Below, piece after piece: positions 20,477 to 53,868 of a stretch of DNA of 64,000 bases. The notes below the pieces were generated by a model. That model ran no database searches, was not told where the DNA came from, and saw nothing but the letters and a program-made list of their open reading frames with translations. A program made the translations under genes and the position numbers. Positions within the stretch are counted from its first letter, which is position 1. The number at the start of each line of letters is the position of its first letter. The stretch comes from Octopus sinensis (lineage: Eukaryota): contig NC_043010.1 in assembly GCF_006345805.1 (NCBI RefSeq), positions 12,152,001 to 12,216,000 of the forward strand. Direction: 5' to 3'.

Positions 20477-20775
20477 TTATTCAACTTTATACAAATGTTT
20501 GATACAGTAAATAAGGGCAGCAAATTTATCATTATTTCTGAAGTGAGATCTCCATGTAAATTCTGTTAAATAGGAGTTAAATAATGCTTTGTTATTACTC
20601 GAATGTTTACGTTGCAATTGTTTCTTAACTCTTGGCCACATCCTGTCAATATTTTTAGTGTGGCTTTCTGAATCATTTGGGTTTTCGTAGTCTATATATT
20701 CATGAGTGTATATGCCTTGTTCAATCTGGTCAATTTGAAGATATTCAGCCCATATGTCTGATACGATATGAGTGC
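20477..20775 (-). CDS. Merlin-derived gene A, exon 2
   Basis: Acceptor cattacag|GC. Hand translation is open: (G)THIVSDIWAEYLQIDQIEQGIYTHEYIDYENPNDSESHTKNIDRMWPRVKKQLQRKHSSNNKALFNSYLTEFTWRSHFRNNDKFAALIYCIKHLYKVE*. This completes the Merlin PGT-I-SD-W...HT-NI(E)-W...YL-EF-WR C-terminus in phase. Confidence 0.88.
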
Positions 20776-20893
20776 CTGTAATGAAAGTAATGACATTTAA
20801 TACAGAAATGAAAACTCACATCAACAGAATAACAGATGAAGTGAAAATAGTTTCAATGGAAAAGCAAAAGCAAATCGTACACCAAGAATAAAT

Positions 20894-21311
20894 GGATCTT
20901 TTCGGTTTGAACAGCAGTTTTTTTCTAGCGGTGTCATATGAAATTGTCACCAATAATTATGACCCTACTATCGATCTATTGCATTTCAATCTATTTTAGG
21001 GTTAGGGTTAGGAGTGGGGGGAAGGGTATCTTTTTTTCTACACAAATGTAAATAAACCCAATCTGTTTCTTAAACGAGGGACATATTCATATGGCACAGA
21101 ATGCTGTTTACCTCAATGGACGTCATTGATTGGTTGAAATTGCAGAAATTGAAGAAAAAAAACAACAAATATCTTACAAACTGTGGAATTTTCTCAATAA
21201 AGCCAAGAGAAAAAGATGTTTTATAAACACATTCTACCAGTATAGGAAGTTTAAAATTTTTTAGTTACCTAGAAATTATGTTAAAAACTGCCGTTCAAAC
21301 CCAAAAGATCC
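20894..21311. mobile_element. GGATCTTTTCGG-family MITE, Merlin-like
   Basis: TIR GGATCTTTTCGGTTTGAAC; 8-bp TSD gaataaat/gaatatat; internal TTAGGG repeats. Lies in the intron of gene A. Confidence 0.85.
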
Positions 21312-21589
21312 GAATATATTGTTGTATCTTAGTGGCAACACCTGTTATTAAAAATTTAATCATCACCTATAGAAGCAGTAGCTCATCTTGAAGGAAGGTA
21401 TCTCTAAGTGCCGAGTATAGTGTCAACAAACATATGCAAGTATTACATCATTTTGTACAGTTGCTTCACCTTTGGGAGTAAAAATTGGTGAGCATAGTCG
21501 TTGTTGAGAGAGTTTGCGACATACGCGACAGGTAACACCAGTTATAATTTTTTAAAGGGGATTTTCAAATTTGTCTTTCACTCTTTATT

Positions 21590-21976
21590 CTTTACTCATT
21601 TACTTGCTTCAGTCATTTGACTGCGGCCTTGCTGGAGCACCGCCTTTAGTCGAGCAAATCGACCCCAAGACTTATTCTTTGTAAGCCTAGTATTTATTCT
21701 ATCAGCCTCTTTTGCCGAACAGTTAAGTGACGGGGACATAAACACACCAGCATCAGTTGTCAAGCAATGTTGGGGGGGGGGGACAAACACATATATATAC
21801 ATATACATATATACGACGGGCTCTTTTCAGTTTCCATCTACCAAATCCACTCACAAGGCTTTTGGTCGGCCCGAGGCTATAGTAGAAGACACTTGCCCAA
21901 GGTGCCACGCAGTGGGACTGAACCCGGGACCATGTGGTTGGTAAGCAAGCTACTTACCACACAGCCACTCCTGCAC
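21590..21976 (-). mobile_element. SINE family 2
   Basis: Similarity to other copies. Confidence 0.85.
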
Positions 21977-22353
21977 ACTATTCAATTTTTACTGACAAAC
22001 TTTACTTCCTCCAAAGCAATTGTCAACACCATCTTAGAAATATATTTCTATCTTTACTTGCTACACTATGACAGAAAACACAGGTATCTATTTATTTTCC
22101 TTCTTCACGGTTTGTTGATTCAACATTACAATTTTACAATCCTGTTAAGAATGTTAGAGTTACCTCTCTTAGATACTTAAATGAAAAATATTACCGTAAA
22201 TCCTCGAGTATAGTCCGCCCTTGAGTATAATACGCAGGGGATTTTTAGGGGGCTGTACCTCTGAAAAACCTAAACCTTGTGTATAATACGCACCCCTTCT
22301 CTAACTTGAGTCAAGGAGGTCTATATAACGTCCTTGGTTTGTAAAAATGTATA

Positions 22354-22755
22354 GGCGCAGGAGTGGCTGTGTGGTAAGTAGCTTGCTTACCAACCACATG
22401 GTTCCGGGTTCAGTCCCACTGCGTGGCACCTTGGGCAAGTATCTTCTGCTATAGCCTCAGGCCGACCAAAGCCTTGTGAGTGGATTTGGTAGACGGAAAC
22501 TGAAAGAAGCCCGTCGTATATATGTATGTATATATATATGTGTGTATGTTTGTGTGTCTGTGTTTGTCCCCCTAGCATTGCTTGACAACCGATGCTGGTG
22601 TGTTTATGTCCCCATTACTTAGCAGTTCGGCAAAAGAGACCGATAGAATAAGTACTGGGCTTACAAAGAATAAGTCCTGGGGTCGATTTGCTCGACTAAA
22701 GGCGGTGCTCCAGCATGGCTGCAGTCAAATGACTGAAACAAGTAAAAGAGTAAAG
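22354..22755 (+). mobile_element. SINE family 2 (nested)
   Basis: Similarity to other copies. Confidence 0.85.
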
Positions 22756-23170
22756 ATAGGTAACGTCCTTTATTATTATTGTATATATAGTATAATGCAA
22801 ACGTGTAGGTTTTTTTTCATGCATTTTGTTTGGGGGAAATAAAGAAATAACAGTAATAACGTCAGTGAAAAATAAATATTAAGTAAATTGCCTTTATATA
22901 TTTATCACTATCAGTTACAAAAGCAAAAAACATTTATTCAAATCCTTCAAATTCAACATCACTTTCAGCATCAAATAATTGTTTCATTTGTTCTTCCGTA
23001 AACATGTCAGCATCATTGTAGTATATAAATCTCCGTCGTCGTCAGATTCATAGTCAACATCAGAAGATTCACTTTCATTTATTTCTGAATACTTTTATTT
23101 TAATAAATGTTGCTTACTGCAAGTTATGGATGATTCTTTTATGACTTCATTGCTTTCAGGCTTAGCTTAA

Positions 23171-23391
23171 CCCTTTCGTTACTGTATTTATTTTGAGATG
23201 CTCTGTGTTTCTTTCAATTACTTTGAATATAACAAAGAATTTAGTAAAATAACTTAGTTATCATTCAGCTAATGCTAGGAACATAAATTGTGACTCAGGA
23301 TTGGTAGAAGATTCTAATTCAAGACTTATGAAAACAAGACTTTTGTACTACAGAACCAGAGCCGGTTTCAGCCGGGTTGGTAACAAAAGGG
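23171..23391. mobile_element. piggyBac-like MITE
   Basis: TTAA|CCCTTTCGTTAC ... GTAACAAAAGGG|TTAA; second copy at 32833-33053. Confidence 0.85.
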
Positions 23392-23992
23392 TTAAGATAT
23401 TTTCACACCAGACATCACAAAATGCGTCTGAATAAACATTGTCGGACAGCAAATAGACACTGCTTAGAAAATATTTTTCATTTTTAACCTCGTATATAGT
23501 ACGCACTAGGGATTTTGACCTTTAAATTTCGGGGGAAAAAATGCGGATTATACTCGAAGATTTACGGTACCTAATGAAATATACTGCCTTTTCCTATGTT
23601 CCATTGTTTAGTGAGTCAAGTGAACGATCACTTTTATATAATGTTAAGCTTAATACCCTTGCAATAGATCCTAAAGAGACAACTAGTTCTAGAGCCACAG
23701 TTAAGGCAATCCATTTACAAGCTGGGCCAAGCTGATAAGAAAATAACCTATTTGCGTTGGTGCCATTACACATAGTGACTAACTTTGGTATGGTGTACAA
23801 AACATGCTGCCTGTTTTAAACCATCGTCTACACCTTGGATGCTTTTAAAAAAATTGGTTTTGTTACTAGCAATCCTTTCTCTTATTGCCCTATCAGTCAG
23901 TATATATTCCAACATTCTGTTCATAGCTTGTAGATCTCTCCAACAAGAATGGGATTTGGAGGTAACCCAGTGAAACTACAGAAGTAATAACT

Positions 23993-24379
23993 GGATGGAA
24001 GCACTCCGTCGGTTATGACGATGAGGGTTCCGGTTGATCCGAATCAACGGAACAGCCTGCTCGTGAAATTAACGTGTAAATGGCTGAGCACTCCACAGAC
24101 ACGTGTACCCTTAACGTAGTTCTCTGGGATATTCGGCGTGACACAGAGAGTGACAAGGCCGGCCCTTTGAAATACAGGTACAACAGAAACAGGAAGTAAG
24201 AGTGAGAGAAAGTTGTGGTGAAAGAGTACAGCAGGGATCACCACCCCCTGCCGGAGCCTCGTGGAGCTTTTAGGTGTTTTCGCTCAATAAACACTCACAA
24301 CGCCCGGTCTGGGAATCGAAACCGCGATCCTATGACCGCGAGTCCGCTGCCCTAACCACTGGGCCATTGCGCCTCCACT
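23993..24379 (-). mobile_element. tRNA-headed SINE (long subtype of family 3)
   Basis: TSD agaagtaataact; homolog at 49558. Confidence 0.85.
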
Positions 24380-24560
24380 AGAAGTAATAACTAAAGCACT
24401 TCGGAATTTGAAAAGCAATATCCCTGGTTTCTTTCTCCATTTCACTCAACAAGTTTTTCTTCTAAACATTATAAAACATCTAAGAATCTATCAGTTCGAT
24501 AAAGTTATATCATCTTTCTCTCCACTACTAAATACTAACATAATTTGAATAAAGTGAATA

Positions 24561-24980
24561 GGCACAGGAGTGGCTGTGTGGTAAGTAGCTTGCTTACCAA
24601 CCACATGGTTTTGGAATCAGTCCCACAGCGTGGCACCTTGGGCAAGTGTCTTCTTCTATTGCCTCAGCCCAACCAAAGCCTTGTGAGTGGATTTGGTAGA
24701 CGGAAACTCAAAAGAAGCCTGTAGTATATATATGTATATATATGTGTGTGTGTGTGCATGTTTGTGTGTCTGTGTTTGTCCCCCTAGCATCGCTTGACAA
24801 CCAATGCTGGTGTGTTTATATCCCCATCACTTAGCGGTTCGGCAAGAGAGACCAATAGAATAAGTACTAGGCTTACAAAGAATAAGTCCTGGGGTCGATT
24901 TGCTCGACTAAAAGTGGTGCGCCAGCATGGCCACATTCAAATGACTGAAACAGGTAAAAGAGTAAAAATGAGTAAAGGAG
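24561..24980 (+). mobile_element. SINE family 2
   Basis: Similarity to other copies. Confidence 0.85.
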
Positions 24981-25050
24981 TATGTGTATATATATAATCT
25001 CCCTTTTCTTTTCTTCTTTTAAATGGATATAAATAATATATATATATATA

Positions 25051-25410
25051 CAAATATGAGAGAGAATCCACTATGTCGACGCTCTTACGCTAGATATAGA
25101 TCCGCAAAGGGACTGAAACACTAAGAATTGTTCTCGTGTTAATATATAGCGTGCAGTTCAACAAATTATATTTTATGACATACTCCACCGATGATCTGAG
25201 GATAATTATGTAAGTAAAATTGCATAATTTATTAACAGTGAAACAATTGTATGGGGTTAATCTATATTTTTGTTATTTTTCATTTGTCCTGCTCACTTAC
25301 GTTCTTGGTGTATTGAATTTTTCTCGAGAACAATTCTTAGTGGTTCAGTCCCTTTGCAGATTTATATCTAGCGTAAGAGCGTCCACATAGTGGATTCTCT
25401 CTCATATTTG
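25051..25410. mobile_element. Foldback MITE with ~90-bp TIRs
   Basis: caaatatgagagagaatccactatg...gaattgttctcg is mirrored at the right end. Confidence 0.8.
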
Positions 25411-25530
25411 TGTATTAATAATATTTACTGAATCTCAGTCTTTTATGCGCTAAACCACAGGTGTTAAATTGATGTTATTAAATTAATATCCAATTTTTTC
25501 ACCCTCATTTTGACTTATATGTATATATGT

Positions 25531-25927
25531 GTAGGAGTGGCTGTGTGGTAAGTAGCTTGCTAACCAACCACATGGTTCCGGGTTCAGTCCATCTTGGGCA
25601 GGTGTCTTCTGCTATAGCCCCGGGCCGACCAATGCCTTGTGAGTGGATTTGGTAGACGGAAACTGAAAGAAGCCTGTCATATATATGTATATATATGTAT
25701 ATATGTGTATGTGTATGTGTTTGTGCGTGTGTGTGTTTGTCCCCCTAGCATTGCTTGACAACCGATGCTGGTGTGCTTACGTCCCCGTCACTTAGCGGTC
25801 CGGCAAAAGAGACCGATAGAATAAGTACTGAGCTTACAAAAAGAATAAGTCCTGGGGTCGAGTTGCTCGACTAAAGGCGGTGCTCCAGCATGGCCGCAGT
25901 CAAATGACTGAAACAAGTAAAAGAGTA
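25531..25927 (+). mobile_element. SINE family 2
   Basis: Similarity to other copies. Confidence 0.85.
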
Positions 25928-26138
25928 TATATATATATATATATATATTGAATGAAACAAGTATAGGGACTTACATGCTGGACTTAAAGTTTTCGTGTAA
26001 ACAATATGATAATAGTTGCACACTGCTATTGTAAGTCTGATGCCCATCTCTTTCACTCTTATCTTTATTGTAGCTAGGCCACAGCTTGGATTTGCAACAA
26101 TGTCACATTAAGCAATCATTCTTTTAGCATCTCAATCA

Positions 26139-26450
26139 TCATCATCATCATCATCATTTAGCGTCCGTTTTCCATGCTAGCATGGGTTGGACGGTTCAAC
26201 TGGGGTCTGGGGAGCCCGAAGGCTGCACCAGGCCAGTCAGATCTGGCAGTGTTTCTACAGCTGGATGCCCTTCCTAACGCCAACCACTCCGAGAGTGTAG
26301 TGGGTGATTTTATGTGCCACCGACACAGGTGCCAGACGAGGCTGGCGAACGGCCACGCTCGGATGGTGTTTTTATGTGCCACCGACACAGGTGCCAGACG
26401 AGGCTGGCAGACGGCCACGCTCGGATGGTGTTTTTATGTGCCACCGACAA
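26139..26450 (-). mobile_element. RTE 3'-tail-derived short element
   Basis: Shares the 3' end and (GAT)n tail with the LINE at 15200-15407. Confidence 0.8.
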
Positions 26451-26818
26451 TGGTTTGTGATATTGCTTGCAACAATAATTTCTGTTGTTTAATGAAATTT
26501 GATCAAGATCCTATCAAAAATTGTGATAAACGGTTTGTAAAATAATAATGATCTTTCGATAAGTATTTTAAATGGCCAACAAAAGTTTAAGTTGGCTTCC
26601 TGTCAACAAACAATATATTTGACATTTAGTTCTTCGATTATATATTGCCACTAAACTATGCAATCAGTTACTTTCAATTTTGAGACTTATGCACAAAAAT
26701 TTTAAGATGAATCACTAAATTTGTGTGAAAAATCAGGTAATGTGTATATAGTTTATGATACACACACATCTATGGGAATGTGTGTATACTGACACATACA
26801 CAATATTTTCTAATATGA

Positions 26819-27240
26819 AGGTGGTGAGCTGGAAGAAACATTTGCACGCTGGGCTGAATGCTTAGCGGTATTTCGTCTGCCGCTACGTTCTGAGTGCAAA
26901 TTCCGCCAAGGTTAACATTGCCTTTCAACCTTTCGGGGTCAATTAAATAAGTACCAGTTACCTAATTCTTCTTCAAATGAGTCTTTCTTAATTGTAATAA
27001 TTTCCCTTCTTCATGTAATCGACTTAATCCGTTTGTCTGTCCTTGTTTGTCCCCTCTATGTTTAGCCCCTTGTTGGTAGTAAAGGTATTTCATCTGTCTT
27101 TACGTTCTGAGTTCAAATTCCGCTGAGGGTGACTTCGCCTTTCATCCTTTTGGGCTCAATAAATTAATTACCAGTTACATACTGGAGTCGATCTAACAGA
27201 CACGCCCCCTCTCCCAAAATTTCGGGCCTTGTGCCTAGGA
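26819..27240 (+). mobile_element. SINE family 1 (tandem, rearranged)
   Basis: Similarity to other copies. Confidence 0.75.
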
Positions 27241-27405
27241 TAGAAAAGAATATTTTCAAATGTGATCTCAGCTGAAATCATAGCTAATTTGTATTATAAC
27301 CGTAGTCTTTAGAAAGATATCAAAATATTTGTAACACTGATTTGGTGCTTCCAGCAAATGATTCACGATTACCATTTTCTCCTCTGTAGGTTAATTTTGT
27401 ACTTT

Positions 27406-28056
27406 GGTACTACTAGCGAACAGTGGTCCCGGCGCGCGCACGCGCTTACTCGCGCTAGCTAGTCATGACTAGTCGATCCTTACGTTGTGCTTTCGTGTGT
27501 TATTTACTTTGTTTAACAAAAATATTTACTTTGTCTTTTACTTACTTTGTTTAACAAAAATTATGGCAATCTTTCGTCTCTAGTAGACCTTTCCGTCGAT
27601 TTCCGTAAAAAAAAATTTTTTTTTTTTACATATGGGCTTGCGGGAACTTTTGAAGTAATGAGAGCGAAAGAGACTAAGAGAAAGCGATTGTATGACGAGG
27701 GAAGTTCTTTTGAAGTTACCGTGCATGGGAGCATTGATGTACATGTGTGTGTATGTGTGTGTGTGTGTGTGTGTGTTTGATGGGGTGTAGGAGACAGACA
27801 GTATGTTGTGTAAGTGAAGTGCTTCTGTTAGTGTGTGCGAAGAGACAGAGAGAGTAATGTGTCTCTTTCGCTCTCATTACTTCAAAAGTTCCCGCAAGCC
27901 CATATGTAAAAAAAAAAAAAATTTTTACGTAAATCAACGGAAAGTTCTACTAGAGACGAAAGATCCCCAAAATTATTTATTTTGTGTTTTATTTACTTTG
28001 CTACGTAGTCGTTGTAGGATCGACTAGTCACGACTAGCTAGTTCGCTAGTAGTACC
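27406..28056. mobile_element. GGTACTACTAGCGAA-family MITE, Merlin-like
   Basis: TIR GGTACTACTAGCGAA / TTCGCTAGTAGTACC; 9-bp TSD ttgtacttt/ttgtactta. Confidence 0.85.
27565..27968. mobile_element. GGCGATCTTTCG-family foldback MITE nested in the previous element
   Basis: ~100-bp TIRs; perfect 8-bp TSD aaaattat. Confidence 0.85.
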
Positions 28057-28443
28057 TTGTACTTATTCCGAAAGATGATCACATTATGATTAGTAATTAG
28101 CTTCAGTAATTTTTTAAAATTAAAAATCGCTTTCTTTTGTTGTTGTTTTACCACGAAATGTATATTCGATAGTTTGGACGGCGATCTCACGGTATAATTT
28201 ACAGCTTTTGCTTTCTAAAACATAGGCTTTCTTTTCAAGAAATAGTCATTAAAAGATATGCATCACAAAGGAAAGTTAACGGGAGCTAAATTCAGAGGCG
28301 GAGCATCAAACTGTAATTATGCCTGACATCGTTTTGATTATTGTTCGACAATTTCTGGTACATTTGTAATTTATGTCTCACGATTCTAGCAGTTCTATAG
28401 CATATAGAGATAGAGGCAAAAGCCAGCAATAATGAAAACTACT

Positions 28444-28803
28444 AGAGTGGCTGTGTGGTAAGTAGCTTGTTTACCAACCACATGGTTCCGGGTTCAGTCC
28501 CACTGCGTGGCACCTTGGGCAAGTGTCTTCTACTATAGCCTCGGGCCGATTAATGCCTTGTGAGTGGATTTGGTAGACGGAAACTGAAAGAAGCCCGTCG
28601 TATATATATATATATATATATATATGCGTGCCTGTGTTTGTCCCCCTAGCATTGCTTGACAACCGATGCTGGTGTGTTTACGTCCCAGTAACTTAGCGGT
28701 TCGGCAAAAGAGACCGATAGAATAAGTCCCGGGGTCGAGTTGCTCGATTAAAGGCGGTGCTCCAGCATCGCCGCAATCAAATGACTGAAACAAGTAAAAG
28801 AGT
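28444..28803 (+). mobile_element. SINE family 2
   Basis: Similarity to other copies. Confidence 0.85.
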
Positions 28804-29186
28804 ACTGATAGAAAAGATCCCCGAGGAATTAAAAGTTGAAGTGGTACGTTATACGCCAAGATCGCCATTTTGACATATATTCGTGTTGACTTAATTGTTG
28901 AAATGTCAATTTCGCAAATTTTCCTCGGTGTTGTGGGCCGTATATCAACTGGAACTAAGTGTATTTTCACTTGGAAATTTAAATTAAAAGCTCTGTTGAT
29001 GATGTGATTTCACATGTGCCTGTTGTTTCATATAGATACAAGGCCATAATTATTCAGTGACAGTGCGATGGAAAGAAAACAGAACAAAAACGATAGGAAG
29101 AGAATTGGCAAAACAGTGTTTTAAGAATAGTCAAAGATCTGAAGACAATGCAGGTCAAAGAAAACCATAGATATTATTTATCATAC

Positions 29187-29877
29187 CTGGTAAAATCCAT
29201 CGGATAATTGCAGCTTCGAAAGCTTCTTTGTTTTCATGTTCAATGGGTACAAGGAAACATTTGTCGGTGCCACGTTCGATTCCACCAAAAACGCAAAATC
29301 CTTTCACATGTTTTTCATTAGGCTTAGATCTAGAAAATGTGGTTACATCTATTTCGACGACTTTTGGTTCACCTGTCTGTAAATCGAAGCCGCCAATTTC
29401 AGGTGGGTCGTCTAATTCTTTGGGGTGGTCTTCCAGGAACCGTTCTAGCAGTTCTCGGATGAGCCGGAACAGATCAATAGTCGACTTGGGACAGACGTTT
29501 GTTTCGTGGGTCATTTCAGTGTGTAGATAATCTCTCGACCACATATACATAAGCCATATGAATGTTGTCAGCGAGAGGTGGCTATTCTCGAAAAAGGACC
29601 CCTTCCGGATCGATCGGACGAAGTTATGCTTCCGACATCTCCACCGTTTTCCATCGATCCCTTTCTTGTAGCCGACGATCGAACAGGGTTTGCCACAGAT
29701 GAGGCACTGAAAGGAATTGCTTATGAGCTTGTATTTCGCCAACCAGGAAATTGCTACATCACTGGTGGAGGTTTGTTGGAAGAGATCGGAGAATGTCCAA
29801 GACTCCTGCCTAATTCTTTCATCGTCGACATCGTCAGTGCATAACATTTTATAGCTCGATCGTTTACCGCGTGACAT
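29187..29877 (-). CDS. Merlin/IS1595-transposase-derived gene A, exon 1 (691 nt; joins exon 2 at 20775-20477; 329 aa total)
   Basis: ATG at 29877. CxxC...WRC zinc ribbon, SIRKGSFF, IGG...VEID, VFGGIERGT and ILPG are Merlin transposase motifs. Donor CAG|GTATGA at 29187/29186 is conserved in all three paralogs, and sequence similarity stops right after it. Confidence 0.9.
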
Positions 29878-29921: not shown

Positions 29922-29961
29922 ATACGAAACTATTACTCACAAGAAAATATCAGTTTCGTAT
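29922..29961. promoter_or_regulatory. Conserved dyad upstream of gene A
   Basis: Perfect inverted repeat ATACGAAACT-N20-AGTTTCGTAT, 45 bp upstream of the ATG; homologous dyads lie upstream of B and C. Function is inferred. Confidence 0.5.
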
Positions 29962-31775: not shown

Positions 31776-31806
<31 letters not shown>

Positions 31807-40228: not shown

Positions 40229-40834
40229 GAGAGGGTAGTGAAGCATCCTCCAAATCACAACCTAACATCTTACAGAAAAAGGACAGCTTGAGCAACGTGG
40301 TCTTGGTGCAATGTCTCGGAAAAAGGGAGAAGCTATGTAGCCACTTGACCCCATAGAGATACCTTACATAAACTCATTTTTACCCCTGGGAAGAAGTGAT
40401 TCACATCCATATGGCTTCTATCCTTTACACTGTCCAGCATGGGTGGTCCTACTTGGGATCTGCCAGTATAACTTTGAGGGTCATTGATGCACACAAGCTA
40501 CCACTTTTCTACAAGGACTAGACCCTGAGGAAGATTAGTTTGCTGTAGAATTTGAATAAATCCCTCAAAAATACAGAATGGTCGTGACTGGAATACCTTT
40601 GATCATGTTTGCACAATCAAGACAGACATGGAACTAAACTTTCTTTAATCATTATGAAATGAAATCATCATCATCATCATCGTTTAACATCCGCTGACAG
40701 CATATACAGAAGATATGACAATGCTTTTGAAGGATTGACAATTTCCCTAAAGAGATTACTGAGGGAAGTTTCATGGTGTAATAATGAACAGACATGGTCA
40801 GTAATTTATTCAGTTCAAAGATTTTCTTCAACAG

Positions 40835-41243
40835 CCGTAGGAGTGGCTGCGTGGTAAGTAGCTTGTTTACCAACCACATGGTTCCGGGTTCAGTCCCACT
40901 GCATGGCATCTTGGGCAAGTGTCTTCTACTATAGCCTCGGGCCGACCAAAGCCTTGTGAGTGGATTTGGTAGACGGAAACTGAAAGAAGCCCGTCGTATA
41001 TATGCATATATATGTGTGTGTGCGTGTGTGTTTGTGTGTCTGTGTTTGTCCCCCTAGCATTGCTTGACAACCGATGCTGGTGTGTTTATGTCCCCGTTAC
41101 TTAGCGGTTCGGCAAAAGAGACCGATAGAATAAGTACTGGGCTTACAAAGAACAAGTCCCGGGGTCGAGTTGCTCGATTAAAGGCGGTGCTCCAGCATGG
41201 CTGCAGTCAAATGACTGAAACAAGTAAAAGAGTAAAGAGAGTA
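40835..41243 (+). mobile_element. SINE family 2
   Basis: Similarity to other copies. Confidence 0.85.
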
Positions 41244-41451: not shown

Positions 41452-41747
41452 TTAGACTTTATACAAATGTTTGATACAGTAAATTAGGGCAGCGAATTTA
41501 TCGTTATTCTTAAAATGAGATCTCCACATAAATTCTGTTAAATGAGAATAAAATAAGGCTTTGTTATTAATTGAATGTCTTCGTCGTAGCTGTTGCCTGA
41601 ATCTGAGCCACATTTTGCTGATATTTTGAATGTGGATCTCTGGGTCATTTGGGTTTTCATAGTCTATATATTCATGAGTGTATATGCCTTGTTCAATCTG
41701 GTCAATTTGAAGATATTCAGCCCATATATCTGATATAATATGAGTGC
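41452..41747 (-). CDS. Merlin-derived gene B, exon 2
   Basis: Acceptor cattacag|GC. Open frame: (G)THIISDIWAEYLQIDQIEQGIYTHEYIDYENPNDPEIHIQNISKMWLRFRQQLRRRHSINNKALFYSHLTEFMWRSHFKNNDKFAALIYCIKHLYKV*. Confidence 0.88.
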
Positions 41748-42299
41748 CTGTAATGAAAGTAATGAAGAGTTATTTATAAAAGATTTATACGTTTTTCCAA
41801 AGTTAAAAAACAAGTGAAACAGAGATTTAACATAGCAAAACTAAATCACAGACTTCACTCACCAAAAACATATTGATGTATCATAGTAATTTCAAAACTA
41901 AAATAATATAGTTACCATCTATATATGCAGTAATCTGTCTTGAAAGAAGGTATATCCAAGTGTGAATGACTACAGAGTCACATACTGTACTATATACTGA
42001 TGTAATCTCCAGGGATACAGGCATCCAGCAACAGGACCTTCATAATGCTATGATGGACCGTGAAGTCTGGCGTAGCATGGTAAATTCCATTGTCTTGACC
42101 ATGGTTAAACAATGATGGTGAGCAGTGAACAGAAATGTTAAACCATTTCATCTTCAAAGTTAATTTACAGATTCTGCCATTAAGATCTTACAATCCTGTT
42201 TTATGTGTTAGATTTCCCATGTTTAACATATTTAATCCCAAGAAGCTCAATTACTTCATGTAATATACTGCCTTTTGTTATAAGCTTCACTGTTTAGGA

Positions 42300-42655
42300 C
42301 CCCTTGGATGCCATGACCCCTGGACTGGTGGTACGTAAAAAGCACCATCCGAATTGTGGCCGAAGCCAGTGCCGCCTCGACTGGCTTCCGTGCCGGTGGC
42401 ACATAAAATGCACCAATCCGACCGTGGCCGTTGCCAGCCTCGCCTGGCAACTGTGCAGGTGGCACATAAAAAGCACCCACTACACTCACGGAGTGGTTGG
42501 CGTTAGGAAGGGCATCCAGCTGTAGAAACATTGCTAGATCAGACTGGGGCCTGGTGCAGCCTCCTGGCTTCCCAGATCCCCGGTCGAACCGTCCAACCCG
42601 TGCTAGCATGGAGAACGGACGTTAAACGACGATGATGATGATGATAATGATGTTT
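42300..42655 (+). mobile_element. RTE 3'-tail-derived element
   Basis: Shared 3' end and (GAT)n tail. Confidence 0.8.
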
Positions 42656-42769
42656 AATGAGTCTAAATTGACATGCACGACATTATGTAAAAGAAAAAAA
42701 AAGATGAACTGGCTGTCCAAGTATACAGGCATGTCCTCTATATACCCTCACTTTCAAGTGAGCTTAATC

Positions 42770-43330
42770 ATGCAGGCTCGTGGGTGCTGGGGCTACATAA
42801 AAGTACCCATGTTGGTGTCACATAAAAGTACCCGTGTTGGTGTCACATAAAAGTGCCTGTGTTGGTGCCATGTAAAAGCACCCGTGTTGGTATCCTGTAA
42901 AAGTACATATGCCAGTGTGATGTAAACGCATCCAGCACACTTTGAAAAGTGGTTGATGTTAGGAAGGGCATCCAGCTGTAGAAACCATGCCAAATCAGTC
43001 TGGAGTCCGGTGCAGCTCTCCAACTTGCTAGCTCTGGTCAAACCTATTTCTTTACTACCCACAAGGGGCTAAACACAGTAGGGGACAAACAAGGACAAAT
43101 GAATTAAGTCGATTACATTGACCCCAGTGTGTAACTGGTACTTAATTTATCGACCCCCGAAAGGATAAAAGGCAAAGTCGACCTTGACGGAATTTGAACT
43201 CAGAACATAACGGCAGGCGAAATACGGCTACGCATTTCTGCAGGTGTGCTAACGTTTCTGCCAGCTCGCCGCTCTGGTCAAACCATCCAACTCATGCCAG
43301 CATGGACAACAGACATCAAATGATGATGAC
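42770..43330 (+). mobile_element. RTE 3'-tail element with 25-bp tandem units, split by a family 1 SINE (43046-43272, minus strand)
   Basis: cataaaagtacccgtgttggtgtca about five times; SINE TSD ctctggtcaaacc. Confidence 0.7.
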
Positions 43331-43409
43331 ACATGGTTACAAATCAAAGTTCAAAATTGTCTTAAATTTCACTTGCTGTAAATTGGGCTAAGCTTGTCAT
43401 TCTGTAGAT

Positions 43410-43947
43410 TAGTGCTTCTCAAACTATCTGATGTGGCATACTAGCAGGTGCCTTTTTTTTTTCAATGTGCCAGGGACCAGTAATATTTCTTAGTAATATT
43501 AATTTATACCAGAAACATATATAATGAATAAAAAAAACTACTAATAATGAAATTATTGTATACAGTGCTCAGGTGCACCACAACTTGTCAAAAATGCGTA
43601 TAAAGCATATGCAGTAATGTACAAATGTCTGGAAAGTGAACAGTGTATGAGTCAGATACATGCCTGTGTGTTAATGGAGGGGAGAAAATCAGGTGTAGTG
43701 TTGGTGAATCTCAGGAAGCATGGAAGTTTTGAAGGATGCAGTGCTCCGACAACTAACAACTGATGCCGGCAGTTTGTTCCATGCTTCAGCAACTCTTAGC
43801 GTGAAAAAATATTTCCGAAAGTCATAGGAGCCGTGCTGTTTTCTGACTTTGTAAACATGTCTTGTGAGTGGATATGGTAGACGGAAACTGAAAGAAGCAT
43901 GGACCCCCAAAAATCTTATATGGCCCTCCAGAGGTTATGGACCACTG
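43410..43947. mobile_element. Degenerate hAT MITE containing a CR1 3' fragment (43560-43858, minus strand)
   Basis: TAGTG...CACTG ends; flanks ctgtagat/ctctagag; CR1 tail FTLRVAEAWNKLPASVV. Confidence 0.55.
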
Positions 43948-45286
43948 CTCTAGAGCCCTAGTGTTGATAGAGTTTACATTTATATATATTAGTTTATTAA
44001 ACGATACAGGTGTTAAAGGTATTTACAAAACCTAATACTATTATATTCATACTGATCTTTTTGTTACAGGTTTCGGACAGGTCTTGCACTATAAGAAGTG
44101 GGGATGTGCAGTTACATCGACGTTGCAAGGCCAGGTTGACATAATCAATCATTTTATTAACAACCAGATGTTGCAACTAAAGTCAGCTGTTGAGTGATTT
44201 CTGATCACAACAGAAACACAAGAATTAAACCGAATTCATTAATGTTTCGAATTAGATAAAAAAAACCATGAATAGAAAACCGTTGTAAAACAGGCCCAGA
44301 TCGTGAAATAAAACGATAGCTACATGTAACAAAGCTAAAGTGGTCCAATTACTATGTCAAGGGGTTATAAGTAAGTATCGGTGAAGCTAATTTTTTTAAA
44401 AAGATAGACTGTTTAATGACCTAAAAATAAACAATTTAATGACGTGAAGCCTAACAACATTTTTGTGCTAAACCTGATTCTGTTTCTTCATAACTTTTTT
44501 GGAAAATGCATATTTAAAAAAAAAATTAAATTTTGCAGTGATAAGTTTTCGAGAAGTATAGATTATGCTAGCAAAATTAATAAATGCTTTCTGTAACAAA
44601 CAAAAATCAGTAATAATAATAATGGTTTCAAATTTGGCACAGGGCCATCAAGTTCGAGAAGGGGTTAGGTCAATTACATCGACCCATTCCACCCCCAATA
44701 TCCAACCGCCACTTATTTTATCAACTCCAAAAGGATGAAAAGGCTAAGTCGACAGTGGCGGCATTTAAACACAGAACAGAACAGAACAGAGAAGGCGGGA
44801 GACATAGTGTTAAGTATTTTACCCGGCGTGCTAACGATTCAGTTAGCTCGGGGCACACTTGTGTAGGTATGCCTAATAATAAATGAATAAATTAAAATAT
44901 GGAAAAGTTTCAGATAATTTTCTTTTCACATCTTGAGCTCATTTCCTCAAAACCATTTTTTCTCCCTAAATCTTATCAACATAATCGTAATTTTCCCCAC
45001 CGGAAACGTATTTATGTCGAATTACATTTAAAATTATGCATTTTATGAAGAAACAAAAGTTGAATGAATGAAAGGAGAATTATCCGAAACACCTCCCAGA
45101 AAAGTTTCTAAATTATATTAATATAATTGTGGTATACACCTTCAAAAACCCAATAGTAAATATAATTTTAAAATATGCATTTTACAAAAAAAAGAAAAGA
45201 AAAAAACAGGTAACAAAATCGGAAGGAGTAGCGCCAAACTTTGCACTTACACCTGATTTGAAAATCGTAGATTCTATTACTCATAC

Positions 45287-45977
45287 CTGGTAAAATCCAC
45301 CGGATAATTGCAGCTTCGAATGCATCTTTATTTTCATGTTCAATGGGTACAAGGAAACATTTGTCGGTGCCACGTTCGATTCCACCAAAAACACGAAATC
45401 CTTTCAAATGCCTTTTATTGGATTTAGATCTGGAAAATGTAGTTATGTCTATTTCAACAACTTTCGGTTCACCTGTCTGTAAATCGAAGCCGCCTATCTC
45501 AGGTGCGTCATCTATTTCGGTGGGGTGGTCTTCCAGGAACCGTTCTAGTAGTTCTCGGATGAGCCTGAACAGGTCAATGCTTGATGTCGTGCAGATGTCT
45601 GTTTCAAAGGTGATTTCATTATGCAGGTAATTTCTCGACCACATGTACATGAACCATAGGAACGTTGTCAAGGAGAGGTGACTGTTTTCGAAAAAGGACC
45701 CTTTGCGGACAGATCGAACGAAGTTATGCTTCCGGCAGCTCCATCGTTTGCCGTCGCCTCCGCTGTTGCGAGTGACGAACGAACAAGGGTTACTACAAGT
45801 GGGACACAGGAAAGAATTGCTTATAAGCTTGTATTTAGCTAACCACATCATCGCTGTATCTTTCGTGGAGGTCTGTTGGAAGAGATCGGAGAACGTCCAG
45901 GTCTCTTGCCTAATTTCTTCATCGTCTATGATGTCCGTACTTATCATTTTGCGGCTGGGTTGCTTAGGGCGAGACAT
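45287..45977 (-). CDS. Merlin-derived gene B, exon 1 (691 nt; joins 41747-41452; 328 aa total)
   Basis: ATG at 45977 (MSRPK...) aligns with the A and C starts. Same motifs; donor CAG|GTATGA at 45287. Confidence 0.9.
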
Positions 45978-46029: not shown

Positions 46030-46070
46030 AGGCGAAATCAAGATTCTTAAAGGAAATGTCAGTTTCGTAT
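46030..46070. promoter_or_regulatory. Conserved dyad upstream of gene B
   Basis: AGGCGAAATC-N21-AGTTTCGTAT, 53 bp upstream of the ATG. Confidence 0.45.
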
Positions 46071-46507: not shown

Positions 46508-46670
46508 CACAGGAGTGGCTGTGTGGTAGGTAGTTTGCCTACCAACCACATGGTTCTGGGTTCAGTCCCACTGCGTGGCATCTTGGGCAAGTGTCTTCTG
46601 CTATAGCCCCGGGCCGACCAATGCCTTGTGAGTGGATTTGGTAGACGGAAACTGAAAGAAGCCTGTCGTA

Positions 46671-46727
<57 letters not shown>

Positions 46728-46930
46728 GTCTGTGTTTGTCCCCCTAGCATTGCTTGACAACCGATGCTGGTGTGTTTACGTCCCCGTCACATAGCGGTTC
46801 GGCAAAAGAGACCGATAGAATAAGTACTGGGCTTACAAAGAATAACTCCCGGGGTCGATTTGCTCGACTAAAGGCAGTGCTCCAGCATGGCCGCAGTCAG
46901 ATGACTGAAACAAGTAAAAGAGTAAAAGAG
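46508..46930 (+). mobile_element. SINE family 2
   Basis: Similarity to other copies. Confidence 0.85.
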
Positions 46931-47734: not shown

Positions 47735-47789
47735 AAATATCCTCCTTTTACATTTTTCAAATTCTTTTCCAGCTTGTTTCTCTTTCTCT

Positions 47790-50847: not shown

Positions 50848-51143
50848 TTAGACTTTATACAAATGTTTGATACAATAAATGAGAGCAGCAAATTTATCAT
50901 TATTCCTAAAATGAGATCTCCACATAAATTCGGTTAAATAAGAGTGAAATAAGGCTTTATTATTTATTGAATGTTTACGTTGCAATTTTTGTTTAACTCT
51001 CAGCCACATCCCATCAATATTTTGGGTGTGGATCTCCGGATCATTTGGATTTTCATAGTCTATATATTCATGAGTGTATATGCCTTGTTCAATCTGGTCA
51101 ATTTGAAGATATTCAGCCCATATATCTGATATAATATGAGTGC
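50848..51143 (-). CDS. Merlin-derived gene C, exon 2
   Basis: Acceptor cattacag|GC. Open frame: (G)THIISDIWAEYLQIDQIEQGIYTHEYIDYENPNDPEIHTQNIDGMWLRVKQKLQRKHSINNKALFHSYLTEFMWRSHFRNNDKFAALIYCIKHLYKV*. Confidence 0.88.
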
Positions 51144-51256
51144 CTGTAATGAAGATGATAGTTTATACAGAAATGATGACTTATTTGTAGAACTAAAATG
51201 AGGTGTTTCATTAATACATTTTCCAAAGGACAAAATGAGCAAAAAGATTTAATCAA

Positions 51257-51705
51257 GTGGACCAGGGGCAAATTGGCTGTGCATCAGGACCCCTACTTTC
51301 GGTGACCACAGCCACCTCCCCAGAACCTGATTCCAATGTCTTTCCTTGGGCATGGATACATTGAAACTCTGACGTCCGGCAGCTGACTTGGCAGACACCC
51401 ATAAAATTATTAACCATTTTACAAACTAACTCTGAGCACCTTTTCAAACTCCACCTGTCTAACACCCGTGGACATATTTACAAAGTCAGAAAACAGCACA
51501 ACTCCCATGACTTTAGGAAACATTTTTTCACGCTGAGAGTTGCTGAAGCATGGAACAAACTGCCGGCATCAGTTGTTAGTTGTCAGAGCACTGCATCCTT
51601 CAAAACTTCCATGCTTCCTGAGATTCGCCAACACTACACCTGATTTCCCCCCCTCCATACACACGCAAGCATGTATCTGACTCATACACTGTTCACTTTC
51701 CAGAT
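51257..51705 (+). mobile_element. CR1-type LINE 3' fragment
   Basis: TRGHIYKVRKQH...FFTLRVAEAWNKLPASVV. Lies in the intron of gene C. Confidence 0.8.
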
Positions 51706-51840
51706 ATTTCCCATTTTTGTAACTTTTTCTAACAAGTAAACATCATTTTCTTGGAGAGTTGCGCTTCTAAATTGTTAGTGCGATAGGGAAAAAGAAAAAA
51801 ATTTAGCCAAGGATTGTGACCTTTGAATATCAGGCTCTGC

Positions 51841-52268
51841 GGTACTACTTAAGAAGAGTGGTCCCGGTGCGCGCACTCGCGCATCCGCACTAGTTAGTCG
51901 TGACTAGTCGATCCTACAACGACTACCTAGCAAAGTAAATAAAACACAAAATAAATCATTTTTTTACACAAAGTAAATAATTTTTTGGATCTTTTCTAAA
52001 AGAAGGCCAGATTTTTCTAGTTAACTAAATAATTTGAAACTTCGTATACTGGTAGAATGTGTCAAAAGAAAACATTAATTTCAACTAGTTTTTTTGAGAA
52101 AAATGTATTTTATAAGTTTAAACGTAGTTTAAATCTGCAATTTTAACCAATTGTATTGTCTGTTTTGTTAAAACAAAGTACATAAAACGCAAAAACACAA
52201 AGTAAGGATCGACTAGTTAGCGCGGATGCGCGAGTACGCGCACCGGGATCACTCTTCTAAGTAGTACC
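51841..52268. mobile_element. GGTACTACT-family MITE, Merlin-like
   Basis: Long TIR GGTACTACTTAAGAAGAGTGGTCCCGGTGCGCG; perfect 9-bp TSD aggctctgc. Confidence 0.9.
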
Positions 52269-52404
52269 AGGCTCTGCTTTCATTTTTCAAACTACAGCTG
52301 GTATAATTTTGTTTAATCCGGTCTCCTGAAGTTAAACTACAATATATACATATCTTTAAAAGACCCTTCCGTTTGTGTGTGTGTTTCAAATTCGAAGAGT
52401 CCAG

Positions 52405-52620
52405 ATATATATATGCGTGTGTGTCTGTGTTTGTCCCCCTAGCATTGCTTGACAACCGATGCTGGTGTGTTTATGTCCCCGTTACTTAGCGATTCGGCAA
52501 AAAGAGACCGATAGAATAAGTACTGGGCTTACAAAAGAATAAGTCCCGGGGTCGAGTTGATCGATTAAAGGCGGTGCCCCAGCATGGCCGCAGTCAAATG
52601 ACTGAAACAAGTAAAAGAAT
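52405..52620 (+). mobile_element. SINE family 2, 3' half
   Basis: Similarity to other copies. Confidence 0.8.
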
Positions 52621-52877
52621 AAACTATTCATTTTAAGTATTGTTAAATATTAACCGTTGTTTAGTCCTAGGTCGCTGGCCGTCAAAAGAAATTGTAGAAG
52701 AAGCAGTTTGACAACGTGCCCCCTTTATCTAAGAATCCCCAACAGGGAGAACGAAAGAAAAGTAAAGGCAAAGCTGGATTTTAGGAATAGTATATCGAAA
52801 CGACGACCACACAAACCAAAGGAAGGCGAAAGTAAAGAATACGAACACCCGGTGTTTAGGGTTAGGGTTAAGGTTAC

Positions 52878-53102
52878 GGCGAGGTGGCAGAAACGTTAGC
52901 ACGCCGGCCGAAATGCTTAGCGGGATTTCGTCTGCCGCTACGTTCTGAGTTCAAATTCCGCCGAGGTCGACTTTGCCTTTCATCCTTTCGGGGTCGATTA
53001 AATAAGTACCAGTTACGCACTGGGGTCGATATAATCGATTTAATCCGTTTGTCCTTGTTTATCTCCTCTGTGTTTAGCCCCTTGTGGGTAGTAAAGAAAT
53101 AG
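52878..53102 (+). mobile_element. SINE family 1
   Basis: TSD ggttaaggttacg. Confidence 0.85.
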
Positions 53103-53177
53103 GTTAAGGTTACGCCGAAAATGGGTGATGTGCGTATTCTTTACCTCCGCTCCAAAGGAAACTTGATTTTGTCATAC

Positions 53178-53868
53178 CTGGTAAAATCCATCGGATAATT
53201 GCAGCTTCGAACGCGTCTTTATTTTCATGTTCAATAGGTACAAGGAAACATTTGTCAGTGCCACGTTCGATCCCACCAAAAACACGAAATCCTTTCAAAT
53301 GCCTTTTATTGGATTTAGATCTGGAAAATGTAGTTATATCTATTTCGACGACTTTTGGTTCACCTGTCTGTAAATCGAAGCCGCCTATCTCAGGTGCGTC
53401 ATCTATTTCAGTGGGATGGTCTTCCAGAAACCGTTCTAGTAGTTCTCGGATGAGCCTGAACAGGTCAATAGTTGACTTTGCACAAACATTTGTCTCATGA
53501 GTGATTTCATTATGTAGATAATCTCTTGACCACATATACATAAGCCATATGAATGTTGTCAGCGAGAGGTGACTATTCTCGAAAAAGGACCCCTTCCGGA
53601 TCGATCGGACGAAGTTATGCTTCCGACATCTCCACCGTTTTCCATCGATAATATCTTTCTGGTTTATAAATGTACATTGTTTGTCACAAACGAGACACCT
53701 AAAAGAATTGCTTATGAGTTTATATCTTGCTAACCATGTAACTGCTACATCTTTTGTGGAAGTTTGTTGAAAGAGATCAGAAAATGTCCAAGACTCTTGC
53801 CTAATGTTTTCGTCATCGACGATGTCGGTGCAAATCACTTTCCGAATTGGGCGATTACCGCGGGACAT
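53178..53868 (-). CDS. Merlin-derived gene C, exon 1 (691 nt; joins 51143-50848; 328 aa total)
   Basis: ATG at 53868 (MSRGN...). Same motifs; donor CAG|GTATGA at 53178. Confidence 0.9.

What the first reader, a model, noticed from the sequence alone, without database searches (positions are those of the whole stretch)
20477..53868. Tandem cluster of three intact, intron-containing genes derived from Merlin (IS1595-family) transposase: a candidate domesticated gene family in octopus
Seen: three minus-strand paralogs, each with a 691-nt exon 1 ending ILP-G|GTATGA and a 296-299-nt exon 2 starting TTACAG|GC. Splicing gives uninterrupted 329, 328 and 328 aa proteins. The introns (8411, 3539 and 2034 nt) are full of unrelated SINEs, MITEs and LINE pieces, while no exon carries an insertion, frameshift or stop. 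I found no TIR or TSD bracketing any gene. Established: the motif order (Zn ribbon, SIR-GSFF, IGG--VEID, VFGG-ERG, PGT-I-SD-W, HT-NI-W, YL-EF-WR) is that of Merlin/IS1016/IS1595 DDE transposases, which normally travel as compact TIR-flanked units. Inference: these are immobilised host genes that were then tandemly duplicated. Domestication is well known for hAT, piggyBac, pogo, Harbinger and Transib, but I do not know of a described cephalopod Merlin-derived family. Novelty needs a literature and database check.
Basis: partly seen in the sequence, partly recalled or inferred. Interest (0 to 1): 0.95.

Follow-up and report, generated by a model that had tools for sequence, protein, structure and literature searches.

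The report
Octopus gene family from Merlin transposase
Three neighbouring two-exon octopus genes are former Merlin "jumping gene" enzymes that the host has kept, fixed in place and conserved by selection, as part of an eight-member gene family that no paper I could find describes.

Summary
Three minus-strand genes each have a 691-nt exon 1 and a 296-299-nt exon 2. They share one phase-1 GT-AG intron and encode 329, 328 and 328 aa proteins with a Pfam DDE_Tnp_IS1595 domain.

The window is Octopus sinensis. RefSeq already predicts the three genes as "uncharacterized" (LOC115219239, LOC115218985).

The domestication reading is supported:
- The genome holds 150 or more scored intronless Merlin transposase-domain matches. 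One checked copy is a complete 1.6-kb element with 53-nt TIRs and an 8-bp TSD.
- Only eight loci carry the intron-bearing type, and they form one 100/100 clade.
- O. bimaculoides has the same three genes in the same order, inside collinear flanks.
- Codon positions 1+2 diverge 0.014-0.050 between the species, against 0.089 for neighbouring non-coding DNA. Family-wide ML omega is 0.18.
- No TIR or TSD brackets any of the three genes.

New findings:
- The catalytic triad is D-D-D (D-D-S/N in gene B) where transposon relatives have D-D-E. Two paralogs have lost a catalytic Asp.
- Gene conversion between paralogs inflates synonymous divergence.
- A rare palindrome is conserved upstream of the genes.
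- Some RefSeq isoforms join exons of different paralogs.

Function and expression were not tested. The likeliest role is a DNA-binding nuclear factor.

The parts
29187..29877 (-). Gene A exon 1 (691 nt, ATG at 29877). Encodes the N-terminal helices, the CxxC...CxxH zinc motif and the first half of the RNase H-like core with D177.
20776..29186 (-). Gene A intron (8411 nt, phase 1, GT-AG). Contains four copies of a ~405-nt dispersed repeat. The orthologous intron in O. bimaculoides is 4135 nt.
20477..20775 (-). Gene A exon 2 (299 nt with stop). Carries D237 (SDIW) and D274 (NID). Also used as the second exon of RefSeq isoform X2, which starts with exon 1 of gene B.
45287..45977 (-). Gene B exon 1 (691 nt).
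41748..45286 (-). Gene B intron (3539 nt; 2639 nt in O. bimaculoides).
41452..41747 (-). Gene B exon 2 (296 nt with stop). The third catalytic position is S here and N in O. vulgaris and O. bimaculoides.
53178..53868 (-). Gene C exon 1 (691 nt).
51144..53177 (-). Gene C intron (2034 nt; 2672 nt in O. bimaculoides).
50848..51143 (-). Gene C exon 2 (296 nt with stop).
29922..29961 (-). Upstream palindrome of gene A, ATACGAAACT-N20-AGTTTCGTAT, 45-84 nt upstream of the ATG. The arms are identical in O. bimaculoides; the spacer is not.
53900..53939 (-). Upstream palindrome of gene C, ATACGAAATTA...TTAGTTTCGCAT. It is a perfect palindrome in O. bimaculoides.
46030..46070 (-). Weaker copy of the same palindrome upstream of gene B (GATACGAAACTGA...TGATTTCGCC). 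Coordinates are approximate.

Best explanation
SHOWN. The three genes are immobile host genes descended from one Merlin (IS1595-type) DDE transposase.
- One ancestral copy lost its terminal repeats and gained a spliceosomal intron in the codon just before the second catalytic Asp.
- It then multiplied by duplication into eight loci, including this tandem trio, before O. sinensis and O. bimaculoides split.
- All copies have since been kept under purifying selection. The tandem copies exchange sequence by gene conversion.

INFERRED. The proteins no longer move DNA. They work as nuclear, sequence-specific DNA-binding factors.
- The N-terminal helices and zinc motif would read DNA. The intact RNase H-like core would serve mainly as a dimerising scaffold.
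- Catalysis looks dispensable. Two paralogs carry Gly at a catalytic Asp, gene B has Ser or Asn at the third site, and every member has replaced the transposon's Glu.

GUESS. A likely target is the rare two-armed palindrome kept 40-90 nt upstream of the family's own start codons, which would make the family self-regulating.

The confidence of 0.8 is for 'domesticated, immobile, selected host genes'. I put the DNA-binding regulator mechanism at about 0.4 and the self-regulation idea at about 0.15.
For: Identity
- Pfam DDE_Tnp_IS1595 is hit in all three proteins.
- The AlphaFold2 model has pLDDT 87.6 and pTM 0.85. It shows the beta1-beta2-beta3-alpha-beta4-alpha-beta5-alpha order, with D177 on beta1, D237 just after beta4 and D274 on the following helix.
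- The best Foldseek matches are retroviral integrase N-terminal plus catalytic-core fragments (probability 1.0).

Not mobile
- There are eight loci only, with no fragments and no bracketing TIR.
- A real Merlin element in the same genome is a 1615-bp unit with 53-nt TIRs, an 8-bp TSD and no intron, in copies 90-97% alike.
- At least 150 PF12762 matches over the cut-off were scored out of 672 candidates.

One origin
- The intron-bearing genes form a 100/100 clade on a long stem of 0.92.
- The intron has the same position and phase in all seven intact O. sinensis members and in contig L034.

Fixed loci
- O. bimaculoides carries the same trio inside collinear DNA.
- All eight orthogroups are present in O. 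bimaculoides.

Selection
- Codon positions 1+2 diverge p = 0.021, 0.014 and 0.050, against 0.089 over 10.2 kb of orthologous non-coding blocks.
- dN/dS is 0.04-0.15 for orthologs and 0.11-0.22 for paralogs.
- ML omega is 0.18 on a tree of 4.9 substitutions per codon.

Catalysis relaxed
- Triad table.

Palindrome
- It occurs at 8 sites in 2.7 Gb, three of them family promoters. The arms are conserved and the spacer is not.
Against: - No transcript, protein or binding data were seen. Expression rests on RefSeq (Gnomon) models only.
- A, C and three other orthogroups keep three acidic residues (D-D-D) with the Merlin 36-residue spacing, so residual nuclease activity is not excluded.
- Gene conversion means that ortholog dN/dS is not a clean measure of selection since the species split.
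- The non-coding yardstick comes from BLAST-alignable blocks and may understate the neutral rate.
- Outside the genus Octopus the family is seen only in unnamed sequencing runs.
- The palindrome could be bound by an unrelated factor.
Confidence: 0.8

Rival explanations
1. The genes are domesticated but still work as enzymes. The D-D-D members (A, C and others) would cut or join DNA at specific sites, such as palindromes derived from transposon ends. The catalytically dead paralogs would act as regulators or partners.
For: - Five of the eight orthogroups keep three acidic residues at the canonical positions with Merlin's 59/36 spacing.
- The RNase H-like core is predicted with high confidence.
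- The family's upstream palindrome has its two arms oriented like transposon ends. It shares ATACGA with the TIR terminus of the closest transposon-like relative, L035.
Against: - The transposons' Glu is replaced in every member.
- The motifs next to the catalytic residues have changed (DESK to DVTT, SDGW to SDIW).
- Two paralogs with Gly at a catalytic Asp are conserved just as well.
- The TIR resemblance is only 6-7 bases in a single element.
Confidence: 0.13
2. This is an active or recently active Merlin transposon that carries an intron, and the three copies arose by local transposition.
For: Intact reading frames and a complete transposase-like domain. The genome is rich in Merlin elements.
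Against: - Only eight loci exist, 56-86% identical, with no near-identical copies.
- There are no TIRs or TSDs.
- The same three copies sit at the same place in O. bimaculoides.
- Introns differ in length by kilobases through later repeat insertions.
- Paralog DNA similarity ends about 100 nt upstream of the ATG and about 50 nt past the stop.
Confidence: 0.02
3. These are dead transposon relics drifting neutrally. Their frames would be open by chance, or be kept open only by gene conversion among copies.
For: Gene conversion among the three copies is evident. One family member, at C7:107529111-107534738, has become a pseudogene in O. sinensis.
Against: - Seven of seven other loci are open in O. 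sinensis and eight of eight in O. bimaculoides, although paralog dS is 0.6 to above 1.
- Differences pile up at third codon positions: 62, 68 and 54, against 14, 9 and 33 at positions 1+2.
- Omega is 0.18.
- Conversion alone cannot produce this bias.
Confidence: 0.03

Closest known systems
Merlin / IS1016 / IS1595 DDE transposons (Pfam PF12762; survey of eukaryotes in PMC8101967)
   Same: - Same domain, fold and motif order.
- Same D(59)D(36)X spacing and an N-terminal Cys-rich motif.
- 38-45% identity to intact transposon-like proteins.
   Different: - No TIRs and no TSD.
- Eight fixed loci instead of many copies.
- A conserved intron.
- The third catalytic residue is D, S or N instead of E.
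- New invariant stretches appear (FLEDHPTEL..PPEIGGFD and KFAALIYCIKHLYKV).
- Purifying selection acts at orthologous loci.
Merlin-related conserved ORFs without TIRs in protists (Perkinsela, Perkinsus and others), proposed as domesticated in PMC8101967. Papers on ciliate genomes also mention DDE_Tnp_IS1595; these were listed but not read.
   Same: Same superfamily and the same argument: an intact ORF, no ends, conserved neighbours.
   Different: - Those cases are in protists and are not a spliced multigene family.
- PMC8101967 counts 191 Merlin sequences in O. bimaculoides but does not analyse them or mention these genes.
Classical domesticated DDE transposases of animals (mariner-derived SETMAR, piggyBac-derived PGBD genes, Harbinger-derived HARBI1, pogo-derived CENP-B, Transib-derived RAG1). 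Named from general knowledge, not tested here.
   Same: The same route: loss of ends, fixation, purifying selection, retained DNA-binding domain, and a variably retained catalytic triad.
   Different: - A different superfamily.
- Here the product is a lineage-restricted family of eight members with tandem clusters, gene conversion and mixed-paralog splice isoforms, not a single conserved gene.
C. elegans MAB-31, a nuclear factor in the Sma/Mab TGF-beta pathway (PMC2921377)
   Same: RefSeq names a Hydra Merlin-like protein with PF12762 (P0092) 'male abnormal protein mab-31'. This hints that MAB-31 is itself Merlin-derived and nuclear.
   Different: - This is only a lead from a database name.
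- The MAB-31 paper says the protein resembles nothing outside nematodes.
- I could not obtain MAB-31 to compare it, and no paper links it to transposases.

Membership tests
Merlin/IS1595 transposase superfamily (by descent) | DDE_Tnp_IS1595 catalytic domain recognised by a profile | tested here: met
   PF12762 scores 49.2, 32.7 and 41.5 bits against a cut-off of 27. NCBIfam NF033547 aligns over 1-214 of 215 positions but scores 60 bits, below its cut-off of 75.
Merlin/IS1595 transposase superfamily (by descent) | RNase H-like fold with three catalytic positions in canonical places and about 36 residues between the second and third | tested here: met
   AF2 topology and positions D177, D237 and D274, with spacings of 59 and 36. 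Foldseek matches integrase cores.
Merlin/IS1595 transposase superfamily (by descent) | Groups with Merlin transposases in a tree | tested here: met
   The family nests among intact D-D-E transposon-like proteins at 38-45% identity. Its sister lineage is unresolved.
Merlin transposable element (as a mobile unit) | Terminal inverted repeats bracketing the ORF | tested here: not met
   No bracketing inverted repeat around A, B or C. Paralog similarity stops near the CDS. Positive control: L024 has 53-nt TIRs.
Merlin transposable element (as a mobile unit) | 8-9 bp target-site duplication | tested here: not met
   Without ends there is nothing to flank. The control element L024 has AGCAGA[C/T]A on both sides.
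Merlin transposable element (as a mobile unit) | Canonical D-D-E triad | tested here: not met
   A and C have D-D-D and B has D-D-S (N in other species). Two paralogs have G-D-D and D-G-D. Of the 34 non-octopus relatives aligned, 25 have D-D-E.
Merlin transposable element (as a mobile unit) | Multiple dispersed, similar copies, with insertion sites differing between species | tested here: not met
   Eight loci at 56-86% identity. The loci are orthologous and collinear in O. bimaculoides.
Domesticated transposase gene | Orthologs at the same locus in different species | tested here: met
   O. sinensis, O. vulgaris and O. bimaculoides. Deeper taxa are not resolved; contig L034 comes from an unnamed run.
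Domesticated transposase gene | Purifying selection after immobilisation | tested here: met
   Caveat: gene conversion between paralogs.
Domesticated transposase gene | Transcribed, spliced and translated, with a host function | not testable with these tools
   Only RefSeq models with isoforms are available. The Logan contigs found read into the intron and so are genomic. No paper mentions the LOC identifiers.

The most novel reading that the evidence does not exclude
The family is a cephalopod-specific set of domesticated Merlin recombinases or nucleases that still cut DNA, using a D-D-D site. Their targets would be palindromes derived from transposon ends, including the one in their own promoters. 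Catalytically dead paralogs and mixed-paralog splice isoforms would act as modulators. This would be a small programmed DNA-processing or self-regulating system, not a set of passive DNA binders.
Probability: 0.12. Interest if true: 0.85.

Novelty: new member of a known kind. Interest (0 to 1): 0.55.

Why it matters
Merlin is one of the few eukaryotic cut-and-paste superfamilies with no well-documented host gene derived from it in animals. In the papers I could search, the only proposals concern protists.

This case meets the usual criteria apart from expression:
- the transposon ends are lost;
- the loci are fixed and syntenic in three species;
- purifying selection is strong;
- the family has one origin, marked by a gained intron.

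It is also a family, not a single gene. It has tandem clusters, gene conversion between paralogs, lineage-specific loss of one copy, graded loss of catalytic residues, and a conserved promoter palindrome.

That gives a natural series for asking which transposase activities a host keeps: DNA binding, dimerisation or cleavage. It also adds a lineage-restricted candidate regulator family to octopus genomes, which are noted for lineage-specific gene family expansions and for their transposon load.

Tried and rejected
- Pfam zinc-ribbon families on the N-terminus at E <= 10: nothing. Only a chance WRC hit appeared.
- tRNA and Rfam scans of the window, to type the SINE-like repeats: no hits.
- PDB search by sequence with a 41-member profile: no relative has a solved structure.
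- TIR search around each gene: only opposed copies of dispersed repeats. An 88-nt, 73% pair near gene B adjoins or overlaps SINE-like repeat copies and has no counterpart at A or C.
- Transcript evidence from Logan contigs: every partial family member found reads through the donor into the intron, so these are genomic DNA.
- Literature searches for the six LOC identifiers, 'IS1595 + octopus', 'Merlin + domestication + octopus', 'mab-31 + Merlin' and 'mab-31 + transposase': nothing relevant apart from PMC8101967.
- Ortholog dN/dS taken as a clean post-split measure: rejected. Four-fold sites diverge 0.24-0.29 against 0.095 for non-coding DNA, and gene conversion explains the excess.
- Link between the palindrome and transposon ends: only ATACGA is shared with the TIR of L035. 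The second close element (L052) is cut off inside its TIR, and two others show no clear TIR. I kept this as a weak lead only.
- L014-L016 as a control transposon: their ORF lies inside a repeat of more than 8 kb at 99.5% identity, so I used L024 instead.
- The identity of the organisms behind SRR11869391, SRR25343836 and DRR639055 could not be established.

Full report
**1. What is in the sequence**

- Three minus-strand genes each have a 691-nt first exon ending CCAG|GTATGA and a second exon starting TTACAG|GC.
- The introns are 8411, 3539 and 2034 nt, all in phase 1 inside the Gly codon of ILP-G.
- The spliced products are 329, 328 and 328 aa.
- An exact look-up shows they are RefSeq proteins of Octopus sinensis. 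A is LOC115219239 isoform X1, and is identical in O. vulgaris. B is isoform X3 of the same 'gene'. C is LOC115218985.
- The window is G000:C14:12152001-12216000 of a 2.72-Gb assembly.

**2. What the proteins are**

- All three pass the Pfam gathering score for DDE_Tnp_IS1595.
- An AlphaFold2 model of A, built on a 41-sequence alignment, is confident (pLDDT 87.6, pTM 0.85).
  - It shows N-terminal helices, a three-stranded Cys-rich element (C58, C61, C65, C81, H84), a helical linker and a canonical RNase H-like core.
  - D177 lies on beta1, D237 directly after beta4 and D274 on the following helix.
- The best Foldseek matches are two-domain retroviral integrase fragments.
- No relative with a solved structure is found by sequence.

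**3. Transposon or gene?**

The octopus genome offers its own control.
- A protein search of the whole assembly finds more than 100 intronless Merlin copies at 29-34% identity. A profile search scores 150 matches over the cut-off out of 672 candidates.
- One such element (L024) is a compact 1615-bp unit. It has 53-nt TIRs beginning GGCACTG, an 8-bp TSD and a single ORF that in sibling copies is an intact ~301 aa with D-D-E (in L024 itself a stop cuts it to 168 aa), and those sibling copies are 90-97% alike.

The intron-bearing type is different.
- It exists at eight loci only: the three here, three at C7:107.49-107.535 Mb, one on C15 and one at C7:89.7 Mb.
- All have the intron at the same codon and phase, with lengths of 2.0-9.3 kb.
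- In a maximum-likelihood tree they form one clade (100/100) on a long stem. Each paralog pairs with its O. bimaculoides ortholog. The checked in-genome transposon copies fall in a separate clade; intronless L010 is unresolved in the same large clade as the family.
- No inverted repeat brackets A, B or C.
- DNA similarity between paralogs ends about 100 nt upstream of the ATG, about 50 nt past the stop and about 20 nt into the intron.

**4. Synteny**

- O. bimaculoides carries LOC106868236, LOC106868237 and LOC106868238 in the same order and orientation, with identical splice sites and introns of 2672, 2639 and 4135 nt.
- About 35 kb of that region is collinear with window positions 62,442 to 1,727.
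- The intron-length differences map to lineage-specific blocks that hold the ~405-nt dispersed repeat.
- O. vulgaris has consecutive annotated orthologs.

**5. Selection, and a complication**

- Between the two species, 10.2 kb of orthologous non-coding blocks differ by p = 0.089 (K80 0.095).
- Codon positions 1+2 differ by 0.021 (A), 0.014 (B) and 0.050 (C). The binomial P values are 6e-13, 2e-16 and 1e-4.
- Ortholog dN/dS is 0.05, 0.04 and 0.15. Paralog dN/dS is 0.11-0.22, with dS from 0.6 to saturation.
- A codon model over ten family sequences gives omega = 0.18.
- Unexpectedly, third positions and four-fold sites diverge 2-3 times faster than the non-coding flanks (0.24-0.29). The cause appears to be gene conversion among the paralogs.
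  - Of 76-87 ortholog differences per gene, only 0-2 involve a base absent from the other paralogs. At 27-41 sites both states are present among the paralogs.
  - In sliding windows, nt 241-360 of A is closest to C within each species.
  - At nt 401-640, C of O. sinensis is nearly identical to B, while C of O. bimaculoides is far from everything.
- Ortholog dN/dS is therefore not a pure post-split measure. Conversion only shuffles existing variation and cannot create the strong bias toward third positions, so the conclusion of purifying selection stands.

**6. Catalytic residues**

- Most transposon-like relatives (25 of the 34 aligned) have D-D-E, with the motifs EIDESK, SDGW and NxE.
- Every octopus family member has replaced the Glu.
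  - A, C and three other orthogroups have D.
  - B has S in O. sinensis and N in O. vulgaris and O. bimaculoides.
- One paralog has Gly at the first Asp (EVGMF) and another has Gly at the second (VSGVW). Both are conserved between species.
- The family has also acquired invariant stretches that the transposons lack (FLEDHPTEL..PPEIGGFD and KFAALIYCIKHLYKV).
- This pattern argues that catalysis is not what selection preserves, at least in some members. The fold and the N-terminal DNA-binding part are what is kept.

**7. Other features**

- *Palindrome.* ATACGAAAnT-N18-20-AnTTTCG[T/C]AT lies 40-90 nt upstream of the ATG of A, B (weaker), C and C7a_g1, and upstream of the A, B and C orthologs in O. 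bimaculoides.
  - Its left arm is present in C7b and in the divergent contig L034.
  - The arms are conserved while the spacer varies, and there are no compensatory changes. It therefore looks like a two-half-site DNA element and not an RNA hairpin.
  - The whole genome holds 8 such sites, three of them at these promoters.
- *Mixed isoforms.* RefSeq isoform X2 joins exon 1 of B to exon 2 of A. Isoforms of the C7 cluster mix exons in the same way. All introns share one phase, so such chimeras stay in frame.
- *A lost copy.* One C7 copy is a pseudogene in O. sinensis, with a frameshift and two TGA stops. It is intact in O. bimaculoides.
- *Closest transposon-like relative.* P0011 (45% identity) sits in a 1192-bp contig whose two ends are 35-nt TIRs and which has no intron. 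The intron was therefore most likely gained in the octopus lineage. The TIR terminus shares only ATACGA with the palindrome half-site, which is a weak lead.

**8. How it most likely works**

- Shown: this is an immobile, selected, multi-copy host gene family of Merlin origin.
- Inferred: the proteins are nuclear DNA-binding factors. They would use the transposase's DNA-binding module and its dimer-forming core, with catalysis reduced or lost. They may bind the family's own upstream palindrome.
- An active-enzyme version (D-D-D) is not excluded.
- Neither expression nor function could be tested here.

**9. Novelty**

- The genes are already in RefSeq and UniProt as uncharacterized or 'ISXO2-like transposase domain-containing' proteins.
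- In the searchable literature, the only paper that joins Merlin and octopus counts 191 Merlin sequences in O. bimaculoides. It proposes domestication only for protists.
- A survey of transposon-derived transcription factors that includes Octopus does not mention Merlin.
- None of the LOC identifiers appears in any paper.
- A RefSeq name hints that C. elegans MAB-31 may be a Merlin derivative, but I could not test this.
- I class the finding as a new member of a known kind (domesticated DDE transposases). It is notable for its superfamily and for its family-level dynamics.

Noticed in passing
window 29922-29961, 53900-53939, ~46030-46070; also G000:C7:107514199-107514236: A rare two-armed palindrome (ATACGAAAnT-N18-20-AnTTTCGYAT) is conserved 40-90 nt upstream of the start codons of family members in both species. 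The 2.7-Gb genome holds only 8 such sites, three of them here or at a paralog.
   Followed up: partly
window 45287 (donor of B) to 20775 (acceptor of A): RefSeq isoform X2 of LOC115219239 (XP_036364523.1) is exon 1 of gene B spliced to exon 2 of gene A, which implies a 24.5-kb intron. Isoforms in the C7 cluster mix paralog exons in the same way. RNA support was not checked.
   Followed up: partly
CDS of A, B and C (nt 241-360 and 401-640 of the coding sequence): Gene conversion occurs between the paralogs. Four-fold sites diverge 0.24-0.29 between species, against 0.095 for flanking non-coding DNA. Within a species, some segments of A match C and some of B match C.
   Followed up: yes
G000:C7:107529111-107534738 (L038, L046): The eighth family member is a pseudogene in O. 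sinensis, with an N-terminal frameshift and a TGA in each exon. It is intact in O. bimaculoides (LOC106879049). Its exon 2 is still used in RefSeq isoform X4 of the neighbouring gene.
   Followed up: partly
G000:C7:25422972-25423919 (L010, L041): A single-copy, intronless 321-aa Merlin-like ORF, 38% identical to C. It has ELGES in place of EIDES, so the first catalytic Asp is lost, and it has no detectable TIRs. It may be a second, independent domestication.
   Followed up: partly
P0094, P0095, P0098 (Biomphalaria glabrata proteins): These snail Merlin-like proteins have N at the first catalytic position and N, R or H at the second. At least two of the genes are close neighbours by locus tag. 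They may be a parallel Merlin domestication in a gastropod.
   Followed up: no
P0092 (Hydra vulgaris): RefSeq names a Hydra protein with an intact Merlin D-D-E domain 'male abnormal protein mab-31'. This suggests that C. elegans MAB-31, described as a nuclear factor with no homologs outside nematodes, is Merlin-derived.
   Followed up: partly
L034 (Logan SRR11869391, 1040 nt): A divergent family member, 60-68% identical to every Octopus paralog. It has the same donor site (TTACCAG|GTATGG) and the left palindrome arm upstream. It is either a ninth paralog lineage or an ortholog from a distant cephalopod; the organism is unknown.
   Followed up: partly
window 11914-15170 (+): A non-LTR retrotransposon fragment. 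One 675-aa open frame holds an endonuclease/exonuclease/phosphatase domain and the start of a reverse transcriptase. It accounts for the G+C-rich stretch at 12-16 kb.
   Followed up: yes
window 22353-22759, 24563-24975, 25531-25927, 28445-28804, 40833-41241, 46510-46926 and others: A ~405-nt dispersed repeat with at least 1665 candidate copies in the genome; the 40 scored are 93-97% identical. It has no tRNA or Rfam match. It has inserted repeatedly into the introns and spacers of the cluster.
   Followed up: partly
G000:C2:154556001-154566000, C3:69470001-69480000, C6:47081001-47091000 (L042-L044): A 305-aa Merlin-like ORF, 34% identical to C, lies inside a repeat unit longer than 8 kb. The unit is shared at 99.4-99.7% identity by three chromosomes and its upstream end was not reached. 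This is much larger than a normal Merlin element.
   Followed up: no
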